64,000 bases of DNA from Marsupella aquatica (Eukaryota > Plantae > Marchantiophyta). The translations under genes and the position numbers were made by a program. The notes below the pieces were generated by a model. That model did no database searches. It was not told where the DNA came from and was given only the letters and a program-made list of their open reading frames with translations. Shown here in pieces: positions 39,541 to 61,475 of this stretch (position 1 is its first letter; every line of letters starts with the position of its first letter). The stretch is from assembly GCA_973895155.1 (NCBI GenBank), contig OZ316898.1:5815079-5879078 (forward strand), written 5' to 3'.

Positions 39541-39542
39541 AT

Positions 39543-39554
39543 TGGTATCAGAGC
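39543..39554 (+). promoter_or_regulatory. Primer-binding site (tRNA-iMet) of the outer Copia
   Basis: TGGTATCAGAGC, 2 nt after the LTR. Confidence 0.95.
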
Positions 39555-44200: not shown

Positions 44201-44820
44201 ATGAGGCAACCACTGGGCTTTGTGAAGAAGGGCCAAGAGAGTTTAGTTTGCAGGTTACTTAAGTCCTTGTATGGATTGAAGCAAGCTCCTCGACAGTGGA
44301 ACAAGCGGTTTGATGATTTCATGTTTGCACAAGGATTTACTAGGATGGTGTATGATCCTTGTGTGTATACGAAATCAGTCAAGAATGGTGTGTTTGGTTT
44401 GCTCATTCTAGTGCTCTATGTGGATGACATGTTGATTGCGGCTAAGGATCAAACTGAGGTTGACTCAAAGCAAAATTGAGTTCTGAATTCCGAATGAAGG
44501 ATCTTGGGAAAGCCAAGAGGATCTTAGGTATGGAGACTACGAGGAACTTTGAAACTGGACAGTTGTGGCTGAATCAAGGCAAGTATGCTGAAAAGGTACT
44601 TGCAAGATTCAACATGGAAAATTGTAAGCCAGTAAGTATTCCTTTGGCTCCACATTTCAAGTTATCATCGGTTTTTTGCCCCACGGATCCAGTGGAGAGA
44701 GGCTTGATGACTAAGGTTCCTTATGAGAGGGCAGTGGGCAGTCTAATGTATTTGATGACATGTACCAGGCCTGATCTAGCCCTAGCAATGGGCAAAGTGA
44801 GTAGATTCATGTCAAATCCA
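41270..44820 (+). pseudogene. Outer Copia gag-pol, 5' part (Gag, zinc knuckle, protease, GAG-pre-integrase, integrase, RT)
   Basis: KFEVEKYDGRTDYLLWEKQV, CWKCNKPGHMKRDC, WILDC, LWHCRLGH...CEHC, HSDVWGP, RSDNGGEY, QQNGVCER, YKTRLVAKGFTQ, LYVDDML. Stops at 41447, 41951, 42170 and 42686; frameshift near 44465. Breaks at MSNP. Confidence 0.93.
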
Positions 44821-44821
44821 A

Positions 44822-45150
44822 TGTCACACCATTCTGAGTAGTGTAGTAGTATATCGTGCTATTAGAGTATGTACATTTGGTATGAGTGCTATTGGAGCCG
44901 ATAAGGTTCTGTCAGGTTTGTGTGAGAGGGTACTTCTCACTTGTGAGGCATTGAAAGGTCATCTTTCAATGTTGAGCCTTGGAGAGAGAGGAGCTTGAGT
45001 GTGGCTATGGTGGCTGTGAGCTCCGCTTGTGTAACGTGGATTCCTTGAGTAGTGCAAGGTGCATTGGCTTGACATACGTGTGTGATCGGTTCGGTGCGGG
45101 ATCGATGGGGTATTGTTGACCGAGATCGTTGTGCCGATTGTATGGAGATT
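44822..45150 (+). repeat. Repeat A1 (329 bp) of the Gypsy element
   Basis: Matches 60429-60757 with about 5 substitutions. Confidence 0.95.
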
Positions 45151-45162
45151 ACATTGAAAGAT
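45151..45162 (+). promoter_or_regulatory. Candidate self-priming site (PBS equivalent)
   Basis: ACATTGAAAGAT is the exact reverse complement of ATCTTTCAATGT at 44961-44972 inside repeat A. No TGG-type tRNA PBS is present. Confidence 0.65.
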
Positions 45163-45420
45163 CACATTCGAAATGTGCTGTACGGACTGTGCGGACAGAA
45201 GTTCGATTGATTGAGTTGTTGACGGTTCGTGGTAGCTCGGATCATGTGTTGTTATCGAACAGATCGTTGGTATCTTGACCTGTATCGTTGTTGTCCGATC
45301 GGCCTGCTTCCCGATCGATGTACAGATCTGTGATTGGTGACAGGTTTTGAGTTGGAGGTCGATTGATGATTCGTGGAGGAAAGCGAATGTTGAGTAGATT
45401 TTGGACAGTGGAAGTCGATC

Positions 45421-45510
45421 CGTGAGGCTTCAGATCTGATTGCCGGCTACTGTGAGGCTTCAGATCTGATTGTCGGCTACTGTGGGGCTTCAGATTTGAT
45501 TGCCGGCTAT
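45421..45510. repeat. 30-bp tandem repeat x3 in the Gypsy 5' leader
   Basis: tgtgaggcttcagatctgattgccggctac units at 45421, 45451 and 45481. Confidence 0.9.
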
Positions 45511-45749
45511 TGTTGGACGATGTTGGCAAGGTGTAGGTGAAGCGACGGCTCTTTTCCTGAAGGAACGGAGCTGCCAATGCCCCGTGCGACGGTATCATCG
45601 TTTCAGTGAAAGAAACGAGGGTCAAAGGTGTTGAATCAAGCTGCTGCCAATTCTGTGGAAGGGCTGCGTTTTTCATGAAGGAAATCGACAGTTTTCGGGA
45701 GCTTTTCATGAAGGAAGTAGTTGTTTTTGGGGTTAGGTGTGAGGCGCAC

Positions 45750-46056
45750 GAGGTCACCCATCCCGAAAGTGCTCGCGCAAGGCGACGCGTGAGGTCACCC
45801 ATCCCGAAAGTGCTCCCAACCGCGAACGCGAAGTCACCCATCGCGAGCGCAGGCAGACGCGAGGTCGAGGTCACCCATCCCGGGGCTATTCCGGGCCGTG
45901 AGCGCGAGGGGAGGCACAAGGTCGAGCGCGAGGAGGTCACCCATCCCGGGGCTATTCCCAACCGCGAGCGCTTAACTGGCAAGTTCTCATCCCACCTTGT
46001 GTACACACAAGCTTTGACAACTTGTTGTTTAGATTCAAGCGCCAGGGGGCTTTATA
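45750..46056 (-). promoter_or_regulatory. 5S rRNA-like (type 1) Pol III internal promoter with upstream TATA, plus four extra box-C copies
   Basis: Minus strand 45990-45931 reads ATGAGAACTTGCCAGTTAAGCG-22 nt-GGATGGGTGACCTCCT, with the same spacing as plant 5S box A/IE/box C. TATAAA at 46056-46051. Further GGATGGGTGACCTC copies at 45867-45880, 45791-45804 and 45750-45763, and a variant at 45830-45843. Confidence 0.75.
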
Positions 46057-46517
46057 CATTTCCCGGTTTGTTTAGAGGCCTATTCTAGGCCAAATCAGAG
46101 GCTGTTTTAGGGTTTTTGATACTTCTGAGTCCATCTAGACTCACAGATTGAACCAATTTTGCCTTGGTTCTCATCTACAACATTGGAGTGCCATTGTGAA
46201 GCCTATTATGAAGGCTCTTCCTTGAACCTTATGCACATTGTCATATTGATTTGCATTGGCTTTTGTGTGGAGAGTTGAATGGTATCCATTCTTGTTTCTG
46301 GATCCTCTTCACACATGTTTCCTGTTTATGCGCCATGTTAGTTTCGTGTGGGCGCTTGATTCCATAGGAGTGATCCGGGTTTGCAACTGGACATTCTAGT
46401 GTGCTGTGTATTTCTCTCTTGGTGATGTTGGAGTGATGCCCAACACACCATGGTGAGTGCTTGTGGTGCTGACAGGGATAGATTGCCCTTAGGGTTAGCA
46501 CATAGATTAGGTTAGGG

Positions 46518-48906
46518 TTGGTCACCACGGATTCTTCTGGTGCTATTGGATTACCCGATGGACGACGGACCGGTTTCACTTGGAGTGGGGCACAGTTTCG
46601 GCCAGCGGCATTGGTAGTAGTCAGCAGTGCAGCTTCAGACAGTGATTCTGATGAGGACTCAGTGACCAGTTCTCCTCATCATCAGGTGGTTGCATCTTTG
46701 TTGTGGGATATGGACGAGATGTACGGGGCTACAAAGGGCCCACGACGATACTCTGGTGTAGTTGGCACAATTGATCTGGATGACTTCATCCAGGAGTTTG
46801 ATACGTGGTGCGATATGCAGACATTGCATAACGTCATGTTGTTTACCCCTTTCATGGCATGGAAGGGATTATTCCAGCATTTGGAGGGGCCACCCATGGA
46901 TGACTACCATGAGTTTCGGAAGGCTCATTTGGTTGAGATTGAGGCATGGAGGCAGCATTGGTCGCCTAATTACATGTCCATCACCTATGGCACTAGTGTG
47001 GCTGCCCAACCCATTGCCACAGCTGCTGCTTCTTCTAGCAGCACTAGCCAGAGTGGCACACCATCCACCAGCAGCACTCCAACAGCATCCACCACTACTC
47101 CTGCCGGTGTGATTGTGACAGGAACTAGAGTTGCGCCAGCATTTAATCCTATGGTGGAATTCTTTGAGGTACTGAAGCAGAACTATCAGGGTGTGAAAAC
47201 TGATAAGTTGAAGGGTCTTCAAGAGTTCCAATGCAAGACTGGAGAGAGCCTACGTGAGGCATACACACGTATGCGCAGATTGATCACTGTCACCAAGGGA
47301 GTGACAGAGGCTCAGGCAGTCCAGTTTTGGTATGCAATTCTGGACAGAGAATTGCGACGCAGAGTGAGAGATGTCACTCTGCTTAGGGATGCAGATCCCA
47401 CATTAGCAGTTGTTTTCACCCTTTCTGAGCGCATTGAACTCAATATGGTGAATGAGAAGGTGGTGACTTCCGGATTTGCCAAGGAAGCACCAAAGGCTGC
47501 ATCTACATCCACACCACAGCCTACTGCATGGAAGAGCCAGAGGGAGAAGCCTATTGCACGAGAGTCTACCAGCCAGAGACCTGTGCCCTCTTATGATGGA
47601 CAGCAATCAGGATGTTGGACCTGTGGTGGGGATCATGCACAGAGATATTGTCCAGATCATAGAGGATCAGGGGGAGCATCAGCGACAGTGTAATCACTGT
47701 GGAGCTCCTAGACACACCAAGGATAGGTGTTTCTCACTCCACCCTGAGTTACGGAGAGGAGGATCCCGTACACATGATCAGGGAAGAGGAGGAGGAGGTA
47801 GAGGTGGTGGACGTGGTCGTGGCATGCCACATGCAGGGAGACAGGGAGGTGACGCTGCCCCTGCTGTAATCATAGATCCAAAGGATGCTAAGATTGCTCA
47901 ATTGGAGCAACAACTAGCTGCCATGGCTAGTTCCCAGGTGAGACCTAATTCTGGTGATGGGGCATCTACATCCTATGGACCTTCCACATCCCATGGTCCT
48001 TCCACATCTTATGGAGCTGATGGAGACCTTGCCACCATGGGATTCATGTGTGGCACTGCACATATTGATGCATCAGCAGCTTTGACACATGGGGCAGCCA
48101 AAGCTCTTGAGCCCCGAGGAGCAGTAGTGGAGTTAGATCCACAAAGGGGGGATGCACGTCGGCAGATAAAGCTTCCTCAGTCTTTTACATTGTCAGAGAC
48201 AGTTTAGACTGCCTCTATGAACCCGGTTCGGACAAACCCTGATGTGGGTAAGTTGGCAGAATCAAGTAGTGATGCAGTAGGGATGACAGGTACCTTGCTG
48301 GGGGCGGCTACTGCCATAGTACGCACCCCATTATTTTCAGCGACAGACATGCTGAACTTGGCAGTTGGTCCTGCAGAAGTGTTCAGATTGGCAGCTACAC
48401 TCTGTGAGGACACTCCAGTGGTTGCTTCCCATGCAGAAGCAACTTGCAGTGTTGATGCAGTGAAGACCATGCCACCTACTGCTACTAGTGAGACATGGCA
48501 TGCAGCAGCAGCGAGGTTGGTGGATTTACCAACACGCCCTGCATTTGAGAGGACTAGGTTTAAACCTAGTGTTGTGTCATTGGATAATCGGAGTGGTATC
48601 TTCCGATTAGTTGGGCCTCCTGGAGCAGTATACCAGCCAGAGAGAGTGTTACTGGATACTGGTGCTCAGCCCTTGATGTTGGGGAAGTCTGCCATACGTG
48701 GATTGGGATTGCGTCCAGAGGATTTGGAGGATTGTCCCTTTCCCATTCAGACTTCATTGGGGGGACCTACACCTACACAGCATATCACCAGGAGACCACT
48801 TGATTTGAGGATTCAGGAAGGTCATACCACAGATAGCTCACAGATACAGGCGCGAGCTATTCTGACTAAGGCAGAGTCATATGATGTGTTGGAGGGATGT
48901 ACAGTG
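46518..48906 (+). pseudogene. Gypsy gag (two CCHC knuckles) and aspartic protease, interrupted by the inner Copia
   Basis: Retrotransposon gag QCKTGESLREAYTRMRRL; knuckles CWTCGGDHAQRYC and CNHCGAPRHTKDRC (frameshift ~47690); in-frame TAG at 48205; protease VLLDTGAQPLMLG. The frame CTV|LYPMGF rejoins across the Copia insertion. Confidence 0.88.
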
Positions 48907-49327
48907 TGTTGAGCATAGACGACGATCGCAACGGCAAGCCCATGAACCATCCAACGCACAATAGTCGACACAAGAGATACGTGGTTCACCTCCTTGAGGC
49001 TACGTCCACGGGAACACACAAGAGAGCTTTACTGAACTCTAAGCCCGTCGGCTATACCGAGTCTCCACAGTGTAAGCTCTCCCTATCTCTCAAGTGGCTC
49101 CATAACAATGAGCCTTGGTTCTACCTCTCCAAGCACACATGCCTCTTATGATATAGTGTGCAACTTAGTTGTACCTAACCACATAGTTGTACCTAATCAC
49201 GTAGTTGTACCTAACCACATAGTTGTACCTAATCACGTAGTTGTACCTAACCACGTAGTTGTACCAACCCACGTTGTTGTACCAACCACGTCATACCTAA
49301 CCTAGACGTAAGAGTAAATACCCAACA
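48907..49327 (-). repeat. 3' LTR of the inner Copia (contains an 18-bp tandem array at ~49166-49290)
   Basis: Identical by eye to 54980-55400. Confidence 0.97.
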
Positions 49328-49518
49328 ATCTTCCCCTTGACTCTGGTCTAGGGGAGAGTAATACTGCCAATGTATATGATCCCTCAGCGGGAAGTTCTGG
49401 ACAGAAACCAAACCGGTTTCCCTCTCTAACTAGAGCAAACCAGAACTAAGCCGTAGCCTAATACATAGGAATGAGGAAGAGCATATATCAGTAATTACAA
49501 TGAATGTTTAAGAAAACT

Positions 49519-52500
49519 CTACTTGTGATGCAATTGCAAAACCTGCAATACGTCACGGTGTCTAGAGAAACTCTCCAAAGGAATCACTTTGGTAAATGCG
49601 TCAGCCGGGTTGAGTTTACCATCAATCTTGACTAGCTCAAACAAATTATCAGACACAGCCTGCCTGATAAAATGGTACCTGACGTCAATGTGCTTCACTC
49701 TGCTATCCATCACCTGGTTCACAGCAAGGTGGAGTGCACTTTGACTATCACAATGGAGCTTCACATTCCCCTGTGGCAATCCCATTTCAGTGATAAGTCT
49801 ATCCAACCAAATCGCTTCCTTTGCTGCTTCCGCAGCTGCAACATACTCTGCTTCTGTAGTAGACTGAGCAATACACTTCTGCAAAGTAGACCTCCAACTT
49901 ATGCATCCACCGCCAAGTGTGAACACGTATCCTGTTGTTGATCTCCTTCGGTCCAAATCTTGTCCATAGTCAGAATCTACATAGCCAATCAATGATCTAG
50001 CATTCTTTGCATTCGCATCAAATAAAAGACCATGATCCACGGTACCCTTCAAGTACCTGATAATCCACTTCACTGCTTCCCAGTGTACCTTCCCTGGATT
50101 CGACATGTACCTGCTCACCTTGCCCATAGCCATGGCAAGATCAGGTCTAGTGCAAGTCATCAAATACATGAGACTCCCCACTGCCTTGTCATATGGAACC
50201 TTTGACATCAACCCCTTCTCTGTGTCATCCGTAGGACAGAACGCTGATGATAACTTGAAGTGTGGAGCCAACGGGGTACTTACTGGCTTGCTATTCTCCA
50301 TGTTGAACCTTGCAATTACCTTCCTCGCATAACTGCTCTGCGTCAACCATAGCTTGCCAGCCTCCAAGTCCCTAGTGATCTCCATACCCAAAATCCTCTT
50401 AGCTGGCCCTAAGTCCTTCATCTTAAACTCTGCACTAAGCAGTGCCTTGAGCTTAACAATCTCAGACCTATCCTTGGCTGCAATTAGCATGTCATCCACA
50501 TAAAGTACTAAAACAATGAACCCAAAGACAACATTCTTCACCGGTTTCAAATACACACAAGGGTCAAATACACTTCTGTGAAAACCTTGTGACCGAATCC
50601 AATCGTCAAACCGCTTGTTCCACTGTCTTGGTGACTGCTTCAACCCATACAAGGATTTCAGCAATCTGCAAACCAATTCCTCCTGTCCTCTCTTCACAAA
50701 ACCTAGCGGTTGTCTCATGAAGATCACCTCTTCCAATGTGCCATAGAGGAAAGCTGTGACAACATCCATCTGATCTAGGAGCAGACCAAACATTACAACA
50801 AGTACACACAATAGTCGTATTGTAGAGTACTTAGCAACTGGTGAGAAGACCTCATTATAATCCACACCTTTCTCTTGTGTGAATCCCTTTGCTACCAATC
50901 TAGCCTTGTAGACCTTCGATCCACCTCCTATGGAATTATCCTTCAGCTTGTAAATCCACTTGCTGTCCACCACTTGCTGACCCTTAGGCAGCTTAACAAG
51001 CTCCCAAGTTTTGTTGTCCTTTAGTGACTGCATCTCCGTTTGCATTGCTGCAGTCCACTTCTGCTTCTCCTTTGAAGCACTTGCCTCATGAAATGAAGAA
51101 GGTTCTCCTTCTTCCAAAATTAACGCATCACCCTCATCATCAGCTGTAAAATCATCCTCTTGCAGTTGAGATGAATCAACCCACTGTCCATACCTTGATG
51201 GAGCGCGTACAGTGCGACCAGATGTTCTTCTAGCCGATGACTCCGGTTGATCTGCGTGTGCTGGTACAATTTGAAGCTCAACAGCATCCACTTGCTGCTC
51301 ACCAGCATCAACAAACTTCTCTGGTTCCTCTGGCACAGGAACCAGCTCCATAATTGGAGCAACTCCTTCTCTCCGGTCATGCACCTCATAACCAATCTCC
51401 CCTCAACGAGATCCGGGATAGGAGATTTTCCTTTGTTAGTACGGGAGACCTGAGTATTCTCCCCCTCCTTCAATAATCTGGATTCATTGAAGGAAACATC
51501 CCTACTGACAACGAGCTTACAGGCAATAGGATCCCATAGCCTATAGGCTTTCACACCACTCTGGTACCCAAGAAAAACACATTTCCTGGAGGTAGGATCC
51601 AACTTGGTCCTATTCTGCTTTGGTGTGAGAGCATATGCATCACTTCCAAAAATTACCAAGCCATGATAGTCTGCTTGCCGCTTATAGCGCATCTCAAACG
51701 GCGTTTTGAAATTGATAGCACTAGAAGGAGAAAGATTTACCAAATAAGCTGCGGTATTGACAGCTTCTGCCCAAAATTCTTGTGGTAAACCTGATTGGCT
51801 CAACATACTCCGTGACCGCTCCAACAGTGTCCGATTGAGCCTCTCAGCGACACCATTCTGCTGCGGAGTATAAACTGTGGTGAGATGGCGAGTTATCCCC
51901 TGTTCTGAACAGTACTCTTCAAATTCCATTGAAGTGTACTCCCCGCCGTTGTCTGACCTCAGACTCTTCACCCTTGTATCCAAACACTTGATCGTGTTTC
52001 CAGTCTGATTCTCCACCTGGGCCTTCCACTTCTTAAAAATGGACAAGACATCAGACTTATGTGTCATGAAATAAATCCACACAAATCTTGAGTAATCATC
52101 AATAAATGATACATAGTACAACTTTCCAGAGTGTGAGGGAGTCGGGGATGGACCCCACACGTCACTATGTATGTACTCAAGAACCGTTTTGGAACGATGA
52201 GTTCCAACACCAAAAGCACGACGATGCTGCTTTCCAAGAATGCAATGCTCACAAAACTCTAATTTACAAGATTGCAAATCAGAAATGAGTCCATTCTTCC
52301 GTAAGATAGCCAAACCCTTCTCACTCATGTGGCCTAGCCGTGAATGCCACAGTTGAGTCATCTCCTCGTGAGACTTGGTTACATTGGCCTCTCCACATAC
52401 AGTATTGCCCTGTAACACATACAAATTCTTTTGTCTACTCCCCTTCAAAATCACTGTCTCTCCCGACCTGACTTGAAGTTCACCATCAATAACGCTCCAT

Positions 52501-52790
52501 TGATGACCATTTGAATCCAACACACCGAGTGAAATCAGATTCTTACGCATGCCAGGTACATACCTGACTCCGGATACTATGCGCACAGCGCCATCAAACA
52601 TTTGAATCTTCACAGACCCAATTCCCTCAATTTGACAGGAGTGATCATTTCCCATCAGAACTGAACCGTTTGAAACAGAGTAAGAACTGAAAAACTCACG
52701 AATGTAACAAATATGAAAAGAGCAAGCACAATCAAGAATCCACACATCATCTGCTCTCCTAGATGACGTGCACAGGGCATACCCCCGGCT
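49519..52790 (-). CDS. pol: Inner Copia Pol (PR-IN-RT-RNase H), one frameshift near 51400
   Basis: WILDC, LWHSRLGH...CEHC, HSDVWGP, RSDNGGEY, YKARLVAKGF, LYVDDML, GYVDSD, HIDVRYHF, NPADAFTK. ORFs 51120-52745 and 49519-51384 join through a G-run that is one base short relative to the outer Copia (GEIG motif). Confidence 0.92.
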
Positions 52791-53825
52791 TCATAAAACA
52801 TACTCATCATTGAGTAAATCAGCTTCTCCATCAGCCCTAGCCACATTTGCCGATGAAGTTTCCGCTGCCTTTCCCTTACAGTCTCGCTTGAAGTGTCCAA
52901 CTTGGTTGCACTTCCAACATGTCACCTGCCTCCTCTGAGGGGATTTACCCTTGGACTTAGATCTGGATTTAGATCTAAACTGGGTTCTACGGTCCCCAGT
53001 TGGTCGCTGCATACTCCTCCCACGGTTAACATTGAGGGCAGCACCAGATGATGAAGGCTGTGACGTGATGTGCATCTTCTGCTGAAGATCATCACTAAGC
53101 AGAGAACTTGCCACGTCATTGTATGAAATGGTATCCCTATCACGATGCAACAACACTCGTGATAGGGACTGGTAAGATGGAGGCAATGAACTAAGAAGCT
53201 GCAGAGCCTTCGTCTCATCATTCAAAGTCTCCCCAAGGTTTTCCAAGTCAACGACCATATCGTTGAAAGCATCCACATGGTCTTGCAACTTCGTACCAGA
53301 TTCCTTCATCCTGAAACTCATCAGTTTGTAGGAAGTGTAGAGCCGGTTCGACAACTCCTTGCGGTGATACTTGCTCTGCAATTCCGCAAACAAGGACATG
53401 CAATCCTTATGTGCACCTAACTGCTTGATGATGGGAGGCATGAGATAGAGTGTAACACACCACACTCCCTGCTCCTGCATGCGGTCCCATTGTTTCTCAT
53501 CAACATCATCTTCACGAGGGCTCAGCAGTTGGCCCATCCCTGACGCATAAAGCACTCCCTTCACCTGCTTCTCCCATAGCAAGTAGTCAGAGCGCCCATC
53601 ATACTTTGTCACTTCATACTTGGGTCCCCCAAGCTTGAAAGTCCCCATCTTCTTCTTTACCGTGAGCTCCGGTAGTAGTACTGCTTCCTCCACCACACGC
53701 CGCACCAGTGATGGTATCGGTGTCACGTGCTCTTCCTCCTGCTCCTCTCTCTGCCCCTGAAACCTCCGCGGTGATCCTCGTGCTTCAAGTTCCACGTCTT
53801 CGAAAAACTCCTCCGAATCACTCAT
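52791..53825 (-). CDS. gag: Inner Copia Gag (344 aa) with zinc knuckle
   Basis: KYDGRSDYLLWEKQV, LLSSLPPSY, CWKCNQVGHFKRDC; ends at a TGA in frame with pol. Confidence 0.92.
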   Translation of the reverse strand: MSDSEEFFEDVELEARGSPRRFQGQREEQEEEHVTPIPSLVRRVVEEAVLLPELTVKKKMGTFKLGGPKYEVTKYDGRSDYLLWEKQVKGVLYASGMGQLLSPREDDVDEKQWDRMQEQGVWCVTLYLMPPIIKQLGAHKDCMSLFAELQSKYHRKELSNRLYTSYKLMSFRMKESGTKLQDHVDAFNDMVVDLENLGETLNDETKALQLLSSLPPSYQSLSRVLLHRDRDTISYNDVASSLLSDDLQQKMHITSQPSSSGAALNVNRGRSMQRPTGDRRTQFRSKSRSKSKGKSPQRRQVTCWKCNQVGHFKRDCKGKAAETSSANVARADGEADLLNDEYVL

Positions 53826-54979
53826 ATGAGAAAGTCACAAAAAATGTTGTTTTTCACAACTTCTCAAAAAACTCGAAACTCAACACCGCCGCGTAGCCCA
53901 CAAAGCTAGGAGTCCAATACTGAAAACCAAAATCAAATTTGAAATTTGACGGAAAAGTTATTCAAATTTCGGTCGAGGTGGGTAAAACCTTGGGAAACTC
54001 CCCCGTTTTGACCACCTCAGGGAATAACCGAAATACCAAGTACAACCCGTTGTCGGAATTGCGATGTGATTGGTGCGCTGCATTGCCAACTTCAATGGCT
54101 ACGACCTCGCCAAAAAATAACCAAAAAAGTTACCGTTCGGCGGATGAAATCTTTGTCGGACGGTCAAAAAATAGCTCTCTGGTTTTTTGGAATATTCTAT
54201 GACCCTTGTACAGGCCCTGTGGGAATTTTGGAAGAACAATCGAGGGGCTGACATGTGTCCTCGAACCCCCAAAACCCCCTACCACCCTTCGTCGTCGAAA
54301 TCTGGTCGCGCGCGCAGAAAATACACACGGCAGAATGTACCCCTCGACACCAAACGCAAGATATCTCACTCGGGTTTTGACGAAATCAAGATCCGATTTC
54401 AGATTTGGAAACTAGACTCCGAGGCGATGAAGATCGATATAAGAAGCACCCAAAACGAGGAAAGAACGAGGGAGAAAAAAATTGGTAAAGATGACAGATT
54501 TCTCTCAATTGCCATAGCCAATTTCGAATCAGTTTTTCAAAGAGAAAAAAATGGTACCTTGTCAACAACGAATGTTGATCAATTGCACTTGGTGCCGTCA
54601 CCAAGTCCAACAAGGTAATTGATTTTGCTTAGCCTTCCTCTTTGCATCAAAGAGCCAATCCCGGACTCAAAAACAATCGTCTTGCCTCAATCTCTCCGTT
54701 GAGTCAAAACACTTGACGCTTCTCCCTCCGAGTCGATTGCCAACTTTCTTCACAAAATCCAGAACGACGAAAACTTAGATCTCTCTGCACCACGAGCTCC
54801 GTTCAATGATTTCTTCACACCGTTAGAAAACTCTTGCCCTGATCTATCCGTTGAGCCCATAAACTCCAAGTTCCATGCGATGGAACTCTGGATAATCCAC
54901 CAACACTCAACGCTGGAAAAACCGTCATGAAATCCCGTCACGAACACACGTCACCTCCCAAGCATGCTCTGATACCAAT

Positions 54980-55400
54980 TGTTGAGCATAGACGACGATC
55001 GCAACGGCAAGCCCATGAACCATCCAACGCACAATAGTCGACACAAGAGATACGTGGTTCACCTCCTTGAGGCTACGTCCACGGGAACACACAAGAGAGC
55101 TTTACTGAACTCTAAGCCCGTCGGCTATACCGAGTCTCCACAGTGTAAGCTCTCCCTATCTCTCAAGTGGCTCCATAACAATGAGCCTTGGTTCTACCTC
55201 TCCAAGCACACATGCCTCTTATGATATAGTGTGCAACTTAGTTGTACCTAACCACATAGTTGTACCTAATCACGTAGTTGTACCTAACCACATAGTTGTA
55301 CCTAATCACGTAGTTGTACCTAACCACGTAGTTGTACCAACCCACGTTGTTGTACCAACCACGTCATACCTAACCTAGACGTAAGAGTAAATACCCAACA
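54980..55400 (-). repeat. 5' LTR of the inner Copia
   Basis: TG...CA; followed on the minus strand by the tRNA-iMet PBS. Confidence 0.97.
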
Positions 55401-55861
55401 CAGTGCTCTACCCCATGGGATTTATTCTTGATTTTTGGGAGGAATCAGTGTCATATAGACCTGATTGGCAGTCAGGAGATGCTCGATTGAGCAAATTGCC
55501 AGTGAGATTTAGTGGACCTGTGGGAGGCCCTAAATCCACACCATTGTCTTTGGCAGCATTCAGTGGTGTAATTGCTGGACCTGATGATTTGATTGAGGGT
55601 AATGCGCATGCAGCCGATGTTCCACCATTGGAGGAGTCTCATGAGGAGCACATCATGCGAGGATTACCTGTTGGCAGTGTTGTGCCACCAGTGTGGGGCA
55701 CTGCACAGGCCTTGCCACAGGCAGCAGCACGATTGGTACATGATGCATGGCGTCATGCTTTTACACCATAGTCAGGAGCAGAGCAGTCTCTTGCAGATGG
55801 ACCTGTGACTCTTTCACCATTGGATACCACTCCTATTGCTTGGCAGTATCCACCGGAGGGT

Positions 55862-56812
55862 ATTTGTTTGTTGGATCTTTTTGGTGGGATTAGCACTGGA
55901 TTGGCTGTTGTTCTTCAGGCAGGAATTCCTGTGCGTCGTTATTTGTATGTGGAGACAGATGAGACAACACGGAGGGTCTCATTGCGACATGTGGCTATAT
56001 TGGTGGATAGATATCCACAGTTGCTGCCATTGGATGTTGTTCGTGGTTATCAGCATGCACTACATGCTGATATTTCATTGCTGGGGGCGGATCATCTACA
56101 TCGTGTTGGCCCCATTGATTTGGTGATTGCTGGTTGGCCATGTCAGGGCCAATCTAGAGCTGGCATTGGGCATGGACTTCATGATCCACGCTCTGCATTG
56201 TTTTGGGAGATGTTACGGGTGTTGCGTCATCTCCAGCTACATCAAACACAGGCTCCAGCATACATTTTGGAGAATGTGCCATTGTTAGGTGATGATCGTA
56301 GTCGGATTGTTGCCAGTGTTCACCAGGTGAGGTCTTGGATTGGACCTGCTGTGTTATTGGATGCTGCACGTGTGGGTTCTCGTGCACATCGTCCATGCTT
56401 GTGGTGGACTAATTTGATCCCATGTGAGGTGCTGAAGCGCGCATTTGACAGCATTCCACGCTCACCAGCCTTAGTGGTGGATGATATTTTGGATCCAGGG
56501 CGTCGTGCACAGGGTGTGACCCAACCTGATAGACCTCCATTGGCAATGGTCAATGCATTTGGGTGCCCACGTTGTGCATTACCCACTCTTGTAAGCCACT
56601 CTGTTTCATATGCATTCAGAGCAGGTGGCCTTGGACTTGTATGGGACACAGCTCTCCAGCAGTTAGTGGAGCCTACTGCTGATGAGAGAGAGCGTGCTAT
56701 GGGATTTTTGACTGGCACCACTGCAGTTGCCTCTGTATCACAGGGTTTGCGGCGCCAGGTTCTTGGTCAAGCAATGGATTTGAATTGTTTGACTTAGATT
56801 ATCAGCTTGGGA
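55862..56812 (+). pseudogene. DNMT3-like DNA (cytosine-5) methyltransferase domain within the Gypsy pol
   Basis: Motif I LDLFGGISTG; II YVETD; III ADI; IV IDLVIAGWPCQGQS (catalytic PC); VI ILENV; VIII SRAHRPCLWWTN; IX ERERAMGF; X RRQVLGQAM. Same frame as the protease tail and RT, broken only by point stops. Confidence 0.92.
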
Positions 56813-57145
56813 GTAGCTGAACAGTTGCGGATGCGCTCTGCCGGAATTACTGATTGTCCCTTGGTGAGCTTGCGGTCCACTGAGACAGTATTGACCATAG
56901 CTGGGGGCGAGCAGACAGTCCATGGACCTATGACAGGATTGGCGGCTGGACAGATTGTTCAGCAGGAAGGGACTGCTCAATCTACTGCTAAATAGCAATC
57001 ATTGGCTATCTCTTCTACCCTACAAAGAGATATTAGGGATTTGGTGGAGAGTTGGGAACCACAGCTTGGCCCTAAGTTAACAGGGGAGGAGAGACGTCGC
57101 ATGCATTGATTCCTGAAGAGTTATTGAAATTGTTTTGCATTCAGC

Positions 57146-58470
57146 ATGAAGGATTTGGGGACATTGAAGGGCACTGGTATTCAGATTGAATTGGCTAGTG
57201 ATGCGCCAATCTTTCGTAGACCATACCGTTATAGTGACATGGAGAGAGCTCTGATTGAAAGCAGAACTCAAGATTTGTTGGAGGCTGGATTGGTGGAGAT
57301 TTCATATGGGGAGTATGCATCTACCACAGTGATGCCAGCCAAAAAAGATGTGCATGGCAATTACACAGATAGGCGCATGTGTGGTGATTACAGACCTATT
57401 AATCGCCAGACAAAATCTGATCGATATGCCATGCCCACACCTGAGGAGATCTTTGATGCTGTGGGGCATGCAAAGGTTTTCAGTTCATTGGATCTGAGGG
57501 CAGGGTACCATCAGCTTCCAATTAGGCATGCTGACAGGTCCAAGACAGCATTCTGGGGGATTGATTCTTATGGCAAAGATCGTTTGTATCAGTGGTTATT
57601 CTTACCATTTGGGTTGAAGAATGCACCAGCTGAGTTCCAAAGAGTCATGGATCGAATCCTTGCAGGTTTGGATTTTGTCAGATGTTATATTGATGATATT
57701 TTGGTCTATTCTTCTACTGTGGAAGAACATCAGCAGCACTTGCAGATTGTGATGGAGAGATTGAGAGCACATGGGTTGAAGCTCCATCCTAGCAAGTGTA
57801 AGTTCTTCCAAGACCAGATTGAGTATTTGGGCCACACTATATACCCAGGGGGATTGGGTGTACAGCAGACTAAAGTGGAGGCCATTACACAGATTCCTTG
57901 TCCTACTGATGTGAGTAGAGTTCGTGCATTCTTGGGATTGGCGAGCTACTACAGGAGGTATGTTAAAGGATTTAGCCAGCTTGCTAAACCTTTGACCATA
58001 CTCACTAAGTTGGATCAGGAATGGATTTGGGGTGATGACCAGGAGCATGCCTTTCAGGAGTTGAAGCAAAGGTTGGCATCATCCCCTATTTTGAGAAGAC
58101 CCATTTCATGCAGACCATTTCAGCTACACACTTGGAGTGGAGTAGGACTTGGAGCAGTGCTGACTCAGAAGGATGATGAGGGGAATGAGTTTGTTGTGGC
58201 TTATGCCAGTAGATCAAACAATTCAGCAGAGGCTAAGTATAGCTCTTATGAGGGAGAGTATTTGGCAGCAGTGTGGGCTGTTGCACACTTTCGTTGCTAC
58301 TTGTTTGGTAACCCCTTCACCTTGATCACTGATCATCAGCCTCTTAAGTGGTTAATGGAGTCTGACAAGCTTACATGGAAGCTTGCACGATGGGCATTGT
58401 TGTTATAGGAGTATGATTTCCAGGTGGTGCATAGGCCTGGAAAAGTGAACTTGGATGCAGATGGATTAAG
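57146..58470 (+). pseudogene. Gypsy reverse transcriptase and RNase H
   Basis: RMCGDYRPIN, LDLRAGYHQ, KTAF, LPFGLKNAPAEFQR, YIDDILVYS, FLGLASYYRRY, GLGAVLTQ, VAYASR, TDHQPLKWL, HRPGKVNLDADGLSR; TAG at 58406. Confidence 0.93.
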
Positions 58471-58698
58471 CCGCAATCCATGTACCAGTCAGCAAGATGA
58501 GACTGGAGCTAGATGGCATGATGAGTCAGATAAGGAGATGGTGCCAGGATGGCATGCATCTGCCTTTCTTTGTTGGGTGCCAGCATACAGTGGATTTGTG
58601 GACTCTACCTCATTGGATGGAGTGGATGATGAGTTTTCAGATGTGGATGTTGGTGAGGTAACTTCTGGACAGCAAGATATTCACAATGATGTGAGAGT

Positions 58699-60117
58699 GT
58701 GGAATATCTGCGCAGTAGTTCTATTGTTGGCAGTGTTGATGCCAAGGAACGTGACAGGGTTCTACAGAGAGCCAAGAGCTTTCGATGGGAGGGAAACCAT
58801 CTTTTGAGAGTATTGCATGATGGTAGGATGTTGGTGGTACCAAAACCATCACAACGAGTACATTTGGTGCGACATGCGCACGAGGAGTTGGGTCACTTTG
58901 GTGTGAAGCGCACTTACAGCTTGCTGCAGACATAGTATTGGTAGCATGGTATGCACACTCATGTCCAGCAGTTGATAGCTAAGTGTGTGATATGTGATAG
59001 AGTGAGAGCATCATTTAATGCTCCCACTCCCCAGTTGCACCCGTTACCGATCATGGGTTTGGGATATCGTTGGAGTTTGGATTTTGCTGGTCCATTACCT
59101 CTTACCCAACGTCATAATCGGTATGTTGTGGTCATGGTGGAGCACTTCTCCAAGTGGATTGAGCTAGTGGCGTTGCCAGATAAAGCCAGTGGAGGAGTTG
59201 CTGCTATATTTTTGGATCGTGTACTCAGTCATTTTGGAGCACCAGCTGAGGTGTTGACTGATCAGGGAACTGAGTTCCATGGAGAGTTTGAGAGTTTGTG
59301 TGAACAAGCTCTGATTGATCATCGCACTACCTCTCGTGATCATCCTGAGGCAGATGGATTAGCTGAGAGAGTTGTGCAAACTGTGAAGAGAGGATTGCAT
59401 AAGTATGGCTTGCAGATTGGTCATCTGGGAGATTGGGATCTCCAGCTACCTTGGTTAGCTATGGGCTACCGTTTCAGTCGGCAAGCATCACTTGCATCCT
59501 TCTCACCCTACTTTTTGCTCTATGGTAGAGAGCCAGATTTGCCAGCAGCTATTCGTCGTCATGCTGCACCAGTTGTGAACTTGGATGATCCTGATGTTTG
59601 GGTCAAGGTGTGTTCAGAGAGAGCACGGGTATTTCAGAGAGTGATGCCCATGGCTTTTGACAACCTTGCCATTGCCCAACATCGTGATACTTTGAGGTAT
59701 GCCACTATTCGTGGAAGAGGTTACCGTGCAAGCATTCGACGATTTCATCCTGGTGATCATGTTTATTTACAGCAGACAGCACCCACGACACTTGATGTGA
59801 CCACAGGCCGGACAATCTTACGTGTGCGTGAAGTGTTGCCTTCTGGTGTCCTGATGTTGGAGGGACGCGATGGTATGGTTTGGAAGGATCATGTGCGCAA
59901 TTGTGCACCATGTCACCTTCCCAACATTGATAGTACAGTAGATCCAAGCTTGGCACATGTTCGTGCTGGCTTGAAATGTATGTTGTGTAGAGCTGCTCAG
60001 GGAGCAACTACTATGTTGATTTGTGATAAGTGTTCTAGAGGATGGCACATGTCATGTTTGACACCACCATTGCAGGTGATTCCTAGTGGATCATGGTTGT
60101 GTCCTCAGTGTCAGTGA
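58699..60117 (+). pseudogene. Gypsy DDE integrase with C-terminal PHD finger
   Basis: HHCC zinc domain (HEELGH...CVIC); D in SLDFAGP, D in LTDQGTEF, E in GLAERVV; C4HC3 PHD CMLC...LICDKCSRGWHMSCLTPPL...WLCPQC at 59977-60111. TAG stops at 58933 and 58942. Confidence 0.92.
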
Positions 60118-60277
60118 AGCCGACTAGTTATCATTTGTGTTCTCTTGGCAGATATGGATTGCAGGTAGGTGATCGATGGGGCTCACTTGCATCCGGCTTC
60201 CTGATCTTCACACCTAAAAAGGTGTATATCAACCTTGTAGAACTCATGGCTAGCTAGAGTTAGGGGACCTTACTCCC

Positions 60278-60289
60278 AGCTAGGGGGGC
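60278..60289 (+). promoter_or_regulatory. Polypurine tract of the Gypsy element
   Basis: agctaggggggc immediately precedes repeat B1, with an imperfect hairpin upstream (60250-60283). Confidence 0.75.
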
Positions 60290-60896
60290 GATTGTGGGCT
60301 TTGGACATGTGTGAACATGAGTTCCACTTGTATTCCATTCTTGTATTTGTGATGTGGCAGTGTGACTATGTCTGGATGTATGTGACAAGCGATGTATGTT
60401 GTGTAGCGATATGTATGCGCACGACAGCTGTCACACCATTTTGAGTAGTGTAGTAGTATATCGTGCTATTAGAGTATGTACGTTTGGTATGAGTGCTATT
60501 GGAGCCGATAAGGTTCTGTCAGGTTTGTGTGAGAGGGTACTTCTCACTTGTGAGGCATTGAAAGGTCATCTTTCAATGTTGAGCCTTGGAGAGAGAGGAG
60601 CTTGAGTGTGGCTATGGTGGCTGTGAGCTCCGCTTGTGTAACGTGGATTTCTTGAGTAGTGCAAGGTGCGTTGGCTTGACATACGTGTGTGATCGGATCG
60701 GTGCGGGATCGATGGGGTATTGTTGACCGAGATCGTTGTGCCGATTGTATGGAGATTGATTGTGGGTTTTGGACATGTGTGGACATGAGTTCCACTTGTA
60801 TTCCATTCTCTTGTATTTGTGATGTGGCAGTGTGACTATGTCTGGATATATGTGACAAGCGATGTATGTTGTGTAGCGATATGCATGCGCACGACA
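60290..60896 (+). repeat. Right terminus of the Gypsy: B1 (60290-60426) - GC - A2 (60429-60757) - B2 (60758-60896)
   Basis: B1 and B2 differ by about 4 substitutions and a 2-bp indel. A2 matches 44822-45150. The B1/A2 junction is the palindrome GACAGCTGTC (60423-60432). Confidence 0.95.
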
Positions 60897-61475
60897 CCAG
60901 GGAAGGTACATTGGGAGGCTGTGAAATGGATTCTCAGGTATCTTAAGGGCACAATAGACTATGGTCTGCTGTTTGATAGTAGTTCAAACAAAACCAAATC
61001 TTTGGTTGGCTATGTAGATTCTGACTACGGAGGCTGTCTGGAAACAAGGAGGTCAACTACTGGGTATGTCTTTACTCTTGGAGGAGGATGCATAAGTTGG
61101 AGATCTATCTTGCGGAAGTGTGTATCTCAGTCTACTACAGAAGCAGAATATGTTGCAGCAGCAGAAGCAGCAAAGGAAGCAATTTGGTTGGATAAGCTGG
61201 TCACTGAGATGGGATTGGAGCATGGAAAAATGACTCTTCATTGTGACAGCCAAAGTGCGCTTCACCTAGCTATTAACCAGGTTATGGATAGCAGGGTGAA
61301 ACACATTGACATCAGGTACCATTTTATTAGGCAAACAGTGTCTGATAAAATGTTTGAGCTAGTCAAGATTGATGGAAAGCTCAACCCGGCTGATGCTTTT
61401 ACCAAAGTGATTCCTTTGGAGAGCTACTCAAGACACCGTGCTACTTTGCAAGTTTTGCATTTGCAACACAAGTAG
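60897..61475 (+). pseudogene. Outer Copia pol, 3' part (RT tail and RNase H)
   Basis: PGKVHWEAVKWILRYLKGT, GYVDSD, STTEAEY, HIDIRYHF, NPADAFTK. Confidence 0.93.

What the first reader, a model, noticed from the sequence alone, without database searches (positions are those of the whole stretch)
55862..56812. DNMT3-like cytosine methyltransferase built into the Gypsy Pol polyprotein
Seen: a C5-MTase domain with motifs I-IV, VI and VIII-X in non-permuted order and DNMT3-like motifs VIII-X (AHRPxLWWTN, ERERAMGF, RRQVLGQAM). It lies in the pol frame between protease and RT with no introns. Established: DNMT-carrying retrotransposons were reported in dinoflagellates and the charophyte Klebsormidium (de Mendoza et al. 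2018); plant DRMs have permuted motifs, so this is not a captured DRM. Inference: a land-plant lineage of such elements, recently active, whose particle-packaged MTase could methylate its own cDNA or circle, or the target site.
Basis: partly seen in the sequence, partly recalled or inferred. Interest (0 to 1): 0.9.

Follow-up and report, generated by a model that had tools for sequence, protein, structure and literature searches.

The report
Gypsy retrotransposon carrying its own DNMT3 methyltransferase
A dead copy of a jumping gene in a liverwort-type genome carries its own DNMT3-like DNA-methylating enzyme. This kind of element was described from one freshwater alga, and it turns out to be an old, conserved lineage that also lives in land plants (liverworts and peat mosses).

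Summary
Window 55805-56794 encodes a complete, non-permuted C5 cytosine methyltransferase domain of the DNMT3 type, by Pfam, sequence profile and predicted fold. It sits between the protease and the reverse transcriptase of a Ty3/Gypsy element (44822-60896).

The element is the same kind as KnitGypsy-Dnmt3 of the alga Klebsormidium (de Mendoza 2018). It shares the domain order, the unusual A-coding-B-A-B repeats and the methyltransferase clade. Collinear copies lie in chromosome-scale assemblies of liverworts and Sphagnum, so this is a range extension to land plants, not a new kind.

- **Selection:** the family domain is under purifying selection (dN/dS about 0.1-0.14) and keeps its catalytic residues.
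- **This copy is dead:** a Copia element is inserted in the protease. There are six decay stops and two frameshifts, and a catalytic arginine is lost.
- **New details:** a conserved leaky-type UAG separates Gag-protease-methyltransferase from RT-RNaseH-integrase. The integrase ends in an H3K4me0-type PHD finger. A sister architecture with the methyltransferase after RNase H occurs in green algae.

Self-methylation of the element's cDNA remains inference.

The scan had already flagged this family in at least seven other windows of this genome; one was followed up with the same conclusion.

The parts
44822..60896 (+). Whole Gypsy-DNMT3 element: 16,075 bp including the nested Copia, about 9.6 kb without it. 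It is inserted in the pol of an older Copia (39209-62011). Termini are TGTCAC...CGACA. The 4-bp target duplication is CCAA (44818-44821) / CCAG (60897-60900).
   Evidence: Self-BLAST. Copia B is contiguous across 44820|60897 when compared with Copia A.
44822..45150 (+). Repeat A1, the 5' terminal repeat of 329 bp. It is 98.5% identical to A2.
46518..48207 (+). gag region with two CCHC zinc knuckles (CWTCGGDHAQRYC and CNHCGAPRHTKDRC). A frameshift specific to this copy separates them.
   Evidence: ORF translations. Homology to the gag of the Sphagnum and Calypogeia copies. No Pfam hit.
48217..48906 (+). Protease, N-terminal part, with active site LLDTGAQ. It is cut by the Copia A insertion.
   Evidence: the junction is read
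48907..55400 (-). Nested Copia A. It is not part of the element and disrupts its protease. Its two 421-bp LTRs are 100% identical, and the target duplication is CAGTG.
55406..55768 (+). Protease, C-terminal part, and linker. It is in frame with the MT and is followed by a decay stop (TAG at 55769).
55805..56794 (+). DNMT3-type C5 cytosine methyltransferase domain of 330 codons with motifs I-X. The catalytic Cys113 and the ENV motif are present. The motif VIII second Arg is replaced by Cys198 (TGC at 56396). TAG at 56795 replaces a conserved Trp.
56993..57001 (+). Conserved in-frame stop with a leaky context, TAG CAA TCA (UAG CAR YYA). It marks the boundary between Gag-PR-MT and RT-RH-INT.
   Evidence: The TAG is invariant in a 4-way DNA alignment with Calypogeia, Sphagnum and metagenome copies. 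In L004 it is the only internal stop of a 7.1-kb frame. Six protein clusters end at the homologous ...ALSAT(K/Q/E) position.
57146..58405 (+). Reverse transcriptase (YIDD) and RNase H.
   Evidence: PF00078 5e-35 and PF17917 1e-29
58699..60117 (+). Integrase: H2C2 zinc domain (58699-58932), DDE core, and a C-terminal PHD finger (about 59977-60114). It is reached after a frameshift specific to this copy.
   Evidence: PF17921. PF00665 4e-13 and PF00628 1e-10.
60282..60288 (+). Polypurine-tract-like AGGGGGG just upstream of B1. It is conserved in the Sphagnum copy; the Calypogeia copy has AGGAGGG.
60290..60426 (+). Repeat B1 (137 bp). It is 95.7% identical to B2 over the 139-column BLAST alignment.
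60423..60432 (+). Perfect palindrome GACAGCTGTC spanning B1-end / GC / A2-start, in the form ...CA GC TG...
   Evidence: The same junction occurs in Sphagnum L002 and metagenome L004, and in decayed form in Calypogeia L005.
60429..60757 (+). Repeat A2
60758..60896 (+). Repeat B2, the 3' terminus, ending ...GCACGACA.

Best explanation
**What it is (shown).** This is a degenerate copy of a Ty3/Gypsy LTR-type retrotransposon of the KnitGypsy-Dnmt3 kind. Its coding frame reads gag - protease - DNMT3-type C5 methyltransferase - UAG - RT - RNase H - DDE integrase - PHD finger. It is bounded by split direct repeats (A ... B-A-B) and a 4-bp target duplication. It sits in a bryophyte genome, most likely a liverwort.

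The methyltransferase is an old, selectively maintained component of a Viridiplantae-wide element lineage. It is not a one-off capture. This particular copy is dead.

**How the family most likely works (inferred).**
1. The main translation product is Gag-PR-MT.
2. Occasional readthrough of the conserved UAG CAR YYA stop adds RT-RH-INT-PHD.
3. The MT is therefore made in Gag-like amounts and packaged in the particle.
4. There it methylates cytosines of the newly made double-stranded cDNA, by analogy with DNMT3 and SymbioDIRS-Dnmt3 most likely at CG. I give this step odds of roughly 45%.
5. The PHD finger on the integrase is of the class that reads unmethylated H3K4. It steers integration to silent chromatin, so that new copies arrive already marked and lodged in a safe haven.
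For: **Identity of the domain.** PF00145. DNMT3A/B/C are the best hits by sequence, by profile and by fold. The model has pLDDT 93.8.

**Element anatomy.**

**Same kind as KnitGypsy-Dnmt3.**
- K. nitens GAQ93235.1 (P0210) and its contig L003 read CCHC gag - aspartic protease - MT, then a stop, then RT-RH-INT in the same frame.
- It falls on the same side of the single architecture split in the MT tree, a 74-row clade with SH-like support 97.
- The paper's legend describes the same A-coding-B-A-B repeats with Gypsy domains. I found these repeats in the window, Sphagnum and Calypogeia copies.

**Land plants.** Collinear copies lie on chromosome-scale Sphagnum and Calypogeia scaffolds. A gag-PR-MT fragment lies on a Marchantia polymorpha scaffold, and annotated MT hits occur in M. 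paleacea and Riccia.

**Selection.**
- MT amino-acid identity is 68-72% across liverwort and moss copies, with synonymous sites saturated. dN/dS is about 0.10-0.14, against 0.08 for RT and 0.055 for INT.
- The catalytic Cys is present in 229/230 members, the ENV Glu in 229/232, the RxR arginines in 228/230 and 223/229, and the motif I second Gly in 219/220.

**Readthrough stop.**

**PHD class.** The best solved relatives are CHD4 PHD2, PHF21A/BHC80, ATXR5, AIRE and KDM5 PHD1. From general knowledge, these bind unmodified H3K4.

**Precedent for activity.** SymbioDIRS-Dnmt3 domains methylate CG de novo in yeast.
Against: - No enzymatic activity has been shown for any Gypsy-borne DNMT3. The KnitGypsy-Dnmt3 domain gave no methylation in yeast, though human DNMT3B also failed in that assay.
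- This copy cannot act. Its ORF is broken and it carries Cys at the RxR arginine.
- I could obtain no read or RNA data.
- The substrate (own cDNA, host chromatin or RNA), the sequence context, the proteolytic processing and the readthrough are all inferred from sequence only.
'Liverwort' rests on nearest relatives and on earlier unchecked notes.
- dS is saturated, so dN/dS values are rough.
Confidence: 0.8

Rival explanations
1. The enzyme acts on host chromatin at or around the integration site, or genome-wide, rather than on the element's own cDNA. It would establish heterochromatin that shelters the new copy or dampens its own expression.
For: The MT is co-encoded with an integrase that carries an H3K4me0-type PHD finger, a chromatin-level pairing. 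de Mendoza 2018 discuss possible effects on host methylomes. This Gypsy copy has stronger CpG depletion (o/e 0.38-0.42) than the neighbouring Copias (0.63-0.73), though age and host methylation explain that equally well.
Against: The conserved UAG places the MT in the Gag-PR-MT product, not next to the integrase. After processing, nothing shown here ties it to the target site. The Klebsormidium methylome is plant-like despite carrying these elements. There are no data from this host.
Confidence: 0.2
2. The domain no longer methylates DNA in the life cycle. It would methylate RNA (the genomic RNA or a primer), or serve as a non-catalytic nucleic-acid-binding or dimerisation module in Gag-PR-MT.
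For: KnitGypsy-Dnmt3 was inactive on DNA in yeast. The authors raise RNA methylation for the LINE-borne DNMT. Gag-like stoichiometry would suit a structural or nucleic-acid-chaperone role.
Against: All catalytic and SAM-binding motifs are kept at 96-100% across about 230 diverged members, which argues against a purely structural role. The fold and the best hits are DNMT3, not DNMT2 (DNMT2 E 1.6e-5 against DNMT3A 2e-25).
Confidence: 0.12
3. It is a copy-specific chimera or assembly artefact, in which a fragment of a host DNMT3 or DRM gene, or of a bacterial MTase, landed in one Gypsy copy.
For: None beyond the general frequency of nested insertions in this window.
Against: The same order and frame occur in independent copies from Sphagnum, Calypogeia, Marchantia, Closterium, Klebsormidium and many metagenome contigs. 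Motif order is non-permuted, unlike DRM. Bacterial MTases score far lower. Earlier notes of the scan list at least seven other loci in this genome (unchecked).
Confidence: 0.01

Closest known systems
KnitGypsy-Dnmt3 of Klebsormidium nitens (de Mendoza et al. 2018, PMC5890265)
   Same: The domain order is the same: gag(CCHC)-PR-DNMT3-RT-RH-INT in one frame, with a stop between MT and RT. The A-coding-B-A-B repeat layout matches the paper's Fig. 4c legend. The MT domains are intronless and under purifying selection, and fall on the same side of the MT tree.
   Different: The host is a land plant (bryophyte). MT identity is only about 35%. The stop is UAG CAR YYA about 66 codons after the MT here, against UGA about 16 codons after it in the K. 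nitens contig. A PHD finger on the integrase is present here. It could not be checked in K. nitens because the contig ends inside the integrase.
Animal DNMT3A/3B/3C catalytic domains (for example PDB 6W89, 6U8P, 8TCI)
   Same: Best sequence, profile and fold matches. All ten motifs are collinear. Target-normalised TM is 0.80 at 22-24% identity.
   Different: There are no PWWP or ADD domains. The region between motifs VIII and IX is longer (about 88 against about 63 residues). The domain is expressed as part of a retroelement polyprotein. No activity data exist.
Plant DRM methyltransferases (DRM2; NtDRM, PDB 4ONJ)
   Same: They are DNMT3-related C5-MTases of streptophytes.
   Different: DRM has circularly permuted motifs. 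Only the motif I-VI part aligns, and it aligns to the C-terminal half of DRM (query 96-220 to chain 229-347), at E 5e-13 to 5e-10 against 2e-25 for DNMT3A. This is not a DRM.
SymbioDIRS-Dnmt3 and split-direct-repeat DIRS-like elements (PAT/Ngaro type)
   Same: The A-coding-B-A-B repeat arrangement, and a DNMT3-type MT in the polyprotein.
   Different: These elements use a tyrosine recombinase and make no target duplication. Here there is a DDE integrase (PF00665), TG...CA ends and 4-bp target duplications in three independent copies. No recombinase domain was seen in the ORFs scanned.
Chromoviruses (Gypsy elements with a chromodomain at the integrase C-terminus)
   Same: A chromatin-reader module is fused to the integrase C-terminus, which implies targeted integration.
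   Different: No MT is known in chromoviruses.
EpiLTRs (2026 bioRxiv preprint 10.64898/2026.05.21.726589)
   Same: They are LTR elements that assemble an epigenetic toolkit of methyltransferase(s) plus a chromatin-reader domain.
   Different: Those elements carry a DAM-type adenine MTase plus a DNMT4-related C5 MTase and a chromodomain, in protists. The authors state that this acquisition is distinct from Gypsy-DNMT3.

Membership tests
C5 cytosine DNA methyltransferase (PF00145) | Pfam model above the gathering threshold | tested here: met
   43.2 bits against a cut-off of 22, E 4.5e-11
C5 cytosine DNA methyltransferase (PF00145) | Catalytic and SAM-binding motifs: I FxGxG, IV PC, VI ENV, VIII RxR | tested here: inconclusive
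   Motifs I, IV and VI are intact in this copy. The second Arg of motif VIII is Cys198 here, but R in 223/229 family members. The feature is met for the family and not fully met for this copy.
DNMT3 subfamily | Closest to DNMT3 rather than DNMT1, DNMT2, DNMT5, CMT, DRM or bacterial MTases | tested here: met
   Profile: DNMT3A 2e-25, DRM 5e-13, HhaI 6e-8, DNMT2 1.6e-5; others absent at E <= 0.01. The top 50 Foldseek hits are all DNMT3.
DNMT3 subfamily | Placement inside the DNMT3 clade in a phylogeny with host DNMT3, DRM and bacterial sequences | not testable with these tools
Only TE-borne relatives were returned.
DRM (domains rearranged methyltransferase) | Circularly permuted motif order (VI-X before I-V) | tested here: not met
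   Motifs are collinear with DNMT3A: I at 92-131, IV-VIII at 166-283 and IX-X at 372-402 of the profile.
Ty3/Gypsy LTR retrotransposon | Order PR-RT-RH-INT with a DDE integrase after RT, a gag with zinc knuckle, TG...CA ends and a short target duplication | tested here: met
   PF00078, PF17917, PF17921 and PF00665 in that order. CCHC knuckles and a DTG protease. TG...CA ends and 4-bp duplications in three copies.
Ty3/Gypsy LTR retrotransposon | Two identical full-length LTRs flanking the internal region | tested here: not met
   The repeats are split: A1 at the 5' end and B1-A2-B2 at the 3' end. This holds in the window, Sphagnum and Calypogeia copies.
KnitGypsy-Dnmt3-type elements | An intronless DNMT3 domain within the Gypsy coding frame | tested here: met
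   Same frame as PR and RT. The order in the K. nitens contig L003 is identical.
KnitGypsy-Dnmt3-type elements | DIRS-like A-coding-B-A-B repeats combined with Gypsy domains | tested here: met
   compared with the legend of Fig. 4c
KnitGypsy-Dnmt3-type elements | Purifying selection on the MT domain | tested here: met
   dN/dS is 0.14 against the Sphagnum copy and 0.10 against the Marchantia copy, with dS saturated. 38 of 40 columns that are at least 90% conserved are kept even in this dead copy.
DIRS order (tyrosine-recombinase retrotransposons) | A tyrosine recombinase instead of a DDE integrase, and no target duplication | tested here: not met
   A DDE integrase is present and target duplications are present. 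No recombinase hit was found in the ORFs scanned.

The most novel reading that the evidence does not exclude
Green plants, including living bryophytes, harbour an ancient Gypsy lineage that carries a complete 'writer plus reader' kit: a DNMT3 methyltransferase and an H3K4me0-type PHD finger.

- In this lineage the methyltransferase would be made at Gag stoichiometry through a conserved leaky UAG and packed into particles. It would pre-methylate the element's own cDNA.
- The A...B-A-B layout with a perfect CA-GC-TG palindrome would reflect integration from a circular or permuted intermediate, cut by the DDE integrase at that palindrome.

If some liverwort or moss copies are still active, this would be a tractable land-plant system, for example in Marchantia, for testing why a transposon would methylate itself.
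Probability: 0.2. Interest if true: 0.8.

Novelty: new member of a known kind. Interest (0 to 1): 0.6.

Why it matters
Cytosine methylation is the main way plants silence transposons, so a transposon that keeps its own de novo methyltransferase under selection is counter-intuitive.

The only described Gypsy case is in the alga Klebsormidium. A published opinion states that methylase-encoding transposons are absent from land plants 'such as tracheophytes' (PMC6338049).

Showing the same element kind in liverwort and Sphagnum chromosomes moves the question into genetically tractable land plants such as Marchantia. It also shows that the lineage is old and widespread in Viridiplantae:
- 222 clusters at 50% identity score E < 1e-30.
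- There are two domain orders.

Two features sharpen the hypotheses about mechanism. The conserved readthrough stop puts the MT in the Gag-PR product, and the integrase carries a PHD finger.

Tried and rejected
- **Reads and expression.** There are no copy-number, expression or methylation data.
- **Captured DRM.** Rejected, because the motif order is non-permuted.
- **Bacterial MTase or contamination.** Rejected. DNMT3 scores far higher, and the copies lie inside chromosome-scale plant scaffolds.
- **DIRS membership despite DIRS-like repeats.** Rejected. There is a DDE integrase and a 4-bp target duplication, and no recombinase.
- **All seven in-frame stops are decay.** Rejected for the stop at 56993, which is positionally conserved.
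- **Pfam on gag and the protease N-terminal part.** No hits. These parts were assigned from motifs and from homology to other copies.
- **Tree including host DNMT3.** Not possible, because the searches returned only TE-borne relatives.
- **Within-genome dN/dS between copies.** Not possible, because other windows cannot be read. Cross-species comparisons were used instead, with dS saturated.
- **Naming the host species.** No tool names it. The best named relatives are liverworts at only 57-76% identity.
- **Literature.** Six searches found no explicit report of Gypsy-DNMT3 in land plants. The held library is not complete.
Full report
**1. Is the domain there?**

Yes. The stop-free ORF is 55805-56797, 330 codons.

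- Pfam PF00145 matches at E 4.5e-11, 43 bits against a cut-off of 22.
- Against all PDB sequences the best hits are DNMT3A, 3C and 3B, at E 8.5e-12 to 5e-9. These lie far above M.HaeIII (6e-5), tobacco DRM (1.4e-4) and Arabidopsis DRM2 (7e-3).
- A profile built from 36 family members (alignment A2) sharpens this:
  - DNMT3A scores 2e-25 and DNMT3B/C about 1e-23.
  - DRM scores 5e-13 to 5e-10. It aligns only through its permuted C-terminal half.
  - M.HhaI scores 6e-8 and DNMT2 1.6e-5.
  - Nothing from DNMT1, CMT or DNMT5 appears at E <= 0.01.
- An AlphaFold2 model built on that alignment is confident, with pLDDT 93.8 and pTM 0.92. Its top 50 Foldseek matches in the PDB are all DNMT3A/B/C catalytic domains, at E about 1e-19, target-normalised TM 0.80 and 22-24% identity.
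- Motifs I, IV, VI, VIII, IX and X are collinear with DNMT3A, so the domain is not permuted and is not a DRM.

**2. Surroundings: three nested retrotransposons**

- **Outer Copia.** A plus-strand Copia spans 39209-62011. Its LTRs are 97.3% identical.
- **The Gypsy element.** It occupies 44822-60896 and interrupts the pol of that Copia. By comparison with the second Copia, the outer Copia sequence is contiguous across 44820|60897.
- **Inner Copia.** The Gypsy element is itself interrupted inside its protease by a minus-strand Copia at 48907-55400. That Copia has 421-bp LTRs that are 100% identical and a perfect CAGTG target duplication.
- **Reading across the insertion.** With the insertion set aside, the protease continues in frame (...GCTV|LYPMGF...) into the frame of the MT and RT.
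- **Order of the Gypsy parts:**
  - A1 repeat
  - a 1.4-kb leader
  - gag with two CCHC knuckles
  - protease (LLDTGAQ)
  - MT
  - RT (YIDD) and RNase H
  - integrase with an H2C2 zinc domain and a DDE core
  - a C-terminal PHD finger (PF00628, 1e-10)
  - a polypurine-like AGGGGGG
  - B1-A2-B2

**3. This copy is dead.**

- Besides the Copia insertion, the MT/RT frame has seven stops between 55406 and 58805. All are TAG or TGA.
- There is one frameshift between the two gag knuckles and another before the integrase.
- One of the seven stops, at 56993, is a conserved feature (section 6). The one at 56795 replaces a conserved Trp.
- Within the MT, 38 of the 40 columns that are at least 90% conserved in the family are retained. 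However, the second arginine of motif VIII (RxR; R in 223/229 members) is Cys, with codon TGC at 56396.
- From general knowledge of C5-MTases, this arginine contacts the flipped cytosine.
- A1/A2 differ at 5 of 329 positions and B1/B2 at 6 of 139 alignment columns.
- CpG observed/expected is 0.38-0.42 with a TG/CA excess of 1.5-1.6. The neighbouring Copias show 0.63-0.73. This fits decay of methylated DNA but does not say who methylated it.
- 'Recently active' is therefore not supported for this copy.

**4. The family**

- The word-index search found 254 relatives of the MT ORF with E <= 1e-5. Named ones come from Calypogeia fissa, Marchantia polymorpha, M. paleacea, Riccia sorocarpa, Sphagnum troendelagicum and S. 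tenellum. They lie on contigs of up to 49 Mb.
- The exhaustive representative search found 3,092 cluster representatives with E <= 1e-3 and 222 with E <= 1e-30. Many are 1,000-3,400-residue polyproteins.
- I fetched the DNA of several relatives:
  - The Sphagnum locus (L002, on a 23-Mb chromosome record) is collinear with the window through gag, PR, MT, RT-RH and INT-PHD. Identity is 68% in the MT and 79% in RT and INT.
  - The Calypogeia locus (L005) is likewise collinear.
  - A Marchantia locus (L001) holds gag-PR-MT.
- Against these copies the MT has dN/dS of about 0.14 (Sphagnum) and 0.10 (Marchantia). RT-RH gives 0.08, INT 0.055 and gag 0.14.
- Synonymous sites are saturated (pS 0.68-0.73), so these are rough values, but the domain clearly does not evolve neutrally.
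- Across about 230 MT domains the catalytic Cys, the ENV Glu and Asn, both RxR arginines, the motif I second glycine and the motif IX and X signatures are 96-100% conserved.

**5. Relation to the known Klebsormidium element**

- One representative (P0210) is GAQ93235.1 of Klebsormidium nitens.
- Its protein reads CCHC - aspartic protease - MT. The next gene on the 7.5-kb contig is RT-RH-integrase, in the same frame after a single UGA.
- This is the domain order of the window.
- Among all fetched proteins there are two architectures:
  - **T1:** gag-PR-MT-RT-RH-INT. It occurs in the window, the bryophytes, Closterium, Klebsormidium and some metagenome contigs.
  - **T2:** RT-RH-MT-INT-PHD. It occurs in the chlorophyte Monoraphidium neglectum and most metagenome polyproteins.
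- On a FastTree tree of 232 MT domains the two architectures are separated by a single change. All T1 rows lie in one 74-row clade with SH-like support 97. The window lies in a subclade with Marchantia and Calypogeia, and the Klebsormidium protein lies in the same 74-row clade.
- RT and INT-PHD of T2 elements align end to end with the window's at 43-45% identity, similar to algal T1 elements. This fits one element lineage in which the MT changed place, although no outgroup was available.
- de Mendoza et al. describe KnitGypsy-Dnmt3 as a Gypsy by its domains but with DIRS-like repeats (A-coding-B-A-B). They report Ka/Ks < 0.2 and conserved catalytic residues.
- I find exactly that repeat layout in three copies:
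  - window: A1 44822-45150, B1 60290-60426, A2 60429-60757, B2 60758-60896
  - Sphagnum L002
  - Calypogeia L005
- All three copies also show TGTCA...CGACA termini and 4-bp target duplications (CCAA/CCAG, ATTC/ATTC and AATG/AATG).
- A polypurine run lies just before B1.
- A palindrome lies at the B1|A2 junction. It is GACAGCTGTC in the window and a 14-bp version in Sphagnum. Calypogeia carries a decayed version.
- The window element is therefore a member of the KnitGypsy-Dnmt3 kind, not a separate invention.

**6. A refinement: the MT belongs to the pre-stop product.**

- In metagenome contig L004 the whole coding region (1022-8170) is one frame with a single internal stop, TAG CAG TTA at 5024. 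That stop lies between the MT and RT.
- Six different protein clusters (P0285-P0291) end at the homologous ...ALSAT(K/Q/E) position.
- The window has ...AQSTAK followed by TAG CAA TCA at 56993.
- In a four-way DNA alignment (window, Calypogeia, Sphagnum, L004) the TAG is invariant. It is followed by CAA or CAG (TAA in the decayed Calypogeia copy) and then by UCA, CCA, CCC or UUA.
- From general knowledge, UAG CAR YYA is the tobamovirus-type leaky context that works in plants.
- I infer that the family makes mostly Gag-PR-MT, and by readthrough Gag-PR-MT-RT-RH-INT-PHD. The MT would then be produced in structural amounts rather than catalytic amounts.
- Readthrough itself is not shown.

**7. The PHD finger**

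- The last 56 residues of the integrase ORF match solved PHD fingers of CHD4 (PHD2), KMT2D, PHF21A/BHC80, ATXR5, DPF3, KDM5A/B, AIRE and UHRF1, at E 2e-17 to 1e-9.
- From general knowledge, most of these read the unmodified H3 tail (H3K4me0).
- The finger occupies the position where chromoviruses carry a chromodomain. It is present in both T1 and T2 elements.
- This suggests targeted integration into H3K4-unmethylated, silent chromatin. That is inference only.

**8. Mechanism and its limits**

- **Shown:** the domain type, its fold, its conservation, its position, the element structure and its distribution.
- **Inferred:** readthrough expression, packaging, methylation of the element's own double-stranded cDNA (my best guess, about 45%), and PHD-guided integration.
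- **Rivals:** methylation of host chromatin at the target (about 20%), or an RNA-directed or non-catalytic role (about 12%).
- The only experimental precedent is CG methylation in yeast by SymbioDIRS-Dnmt3 domains. The Klebsormidium Gypsy domain gave none, which the authors call inconclusive because human DNMT3B also failed.

**9. Novelty**

- In the held literature the Gypsy-DNMT3 association is reported for Klebsormidium only.
- Two later papers refer to it as 'streptophytes' while citing the same paper.
- One opinion paper states that methylase-encoding transposons are absent from land plants 'such as tracheophytes'.
- I found no explicit land-plant report, but the library is incomplete.
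- My rating is therefore: a new member of a known kind, with a host range extended to bryophytes.
- Several features appear undescribed:
  - the conserved UAG
  - the PHD reader
  - the second architecture
  - the breadth of the family

**10. Earlier scan notes and unused steps**

- Earlier notes of this scan list the same kind of element in at least seven other places of this genome. One of them was followed up with the same conclusion. I could not read those windows, so copy number rests on unchecked notes.
I reached both independently.
Nearest relatives and the earlier notes point to a liverwort.

Noticed in passing
window 44822-45150, 60290-60896; L002 5742-14931; L005 1861-16900: The repeats are split direct repeats (A ... 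B-A-B), not two equal LTRs. The layout is conserved in three species, together with TG...CA ends, 4-bp target duplications, a polypurine run before B1 and a perfect palindrome (GACAGCTGTC) at the B1|A2 junction. The layout equals a 2-LTR circle of a B+A LTR element opened at the palindrome. This hints at integrase cleavage of a circular or permuted intermediate.
   Followed up: partly
window 56993-57001; L004 5024-5032; L003 4894: A conserved in-frame UAG with CAR YYA context lies between the methyltransferase and RT. It is the only internal stop of the otherwise intact L004 element. The Klebsormidium contig instead has a UGA about 16 codons after the MT. This implies Gag-PR-MT as the main product and Pol made by readthrough.
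   Followed up: partly
window 59977-60114: The integrase ends in a canonical PHD finger. Its best solved relatives (CHD4 PHD2, BHC80, ATXR5, AIRE, KDM5) read unmethylated H3K4. It takes the place of the chromovirus chromodomain.
   Followed up: partly
proteins P0125, P0139, P0150, P0323 (Monoraphidium neglectum): A sister architecture has the DNMT3 domain between RNase H and integrase (RT-RH-MT-INT-PHD). It dominates metagenome hits. The Monoraphidium protein also has a Tudor-like domain (PF21743) after the PHD finger.
   Followed up: partly
window 48907-55400 (minus strand): A Copia element with 100% identical 421-bp LTRs and a perfect 5-bp target duplication, so it is a very recent insertion. 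Each LTR holds a run of overlapping 18-bp-spaced repeats (49127-49323 and 55200-55396) that reads VVPNH... in one frame.
   Followed up: no
window 39209-62011: The outer Copia (LTRs 97.3% identical) hosts the Gypsy element, which hosts the young Copia. This gives three nesting levels and a relative order of insertion.
   Followed up: partly
L004 8505-9528: In the metagenome contig, the 3' end shows a 509-bp B+A unit repeated in tandem at 99.8% identity, with the ACAGCTGT palindrome at 8608 and 9117. This could be a tandem or circular form, or an assembly effect.
   Followed up: no
protein P0023: A 455-residue member of the bryophyte-type MT clade is labelled in NCBI as coming from a 'Candidatus Obscuribacterales' MAG, on a 2.4-kb contig. 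It is probably a mis-binned eukaryotic transposon fragment.
   Followed up: no
window 55406-60896 compared with 48907-55400 and 39209-44821: CpG observed/expected is 0.38 with a TG/CA excess of 1.52 in the Gypsy 3' part, against 0.63-0.73 and 1.14-1.24 in the two Copias. All in-frame stops are TAG or TGA. This fits deamination decay of methylated DNA.
   Followed up: partly
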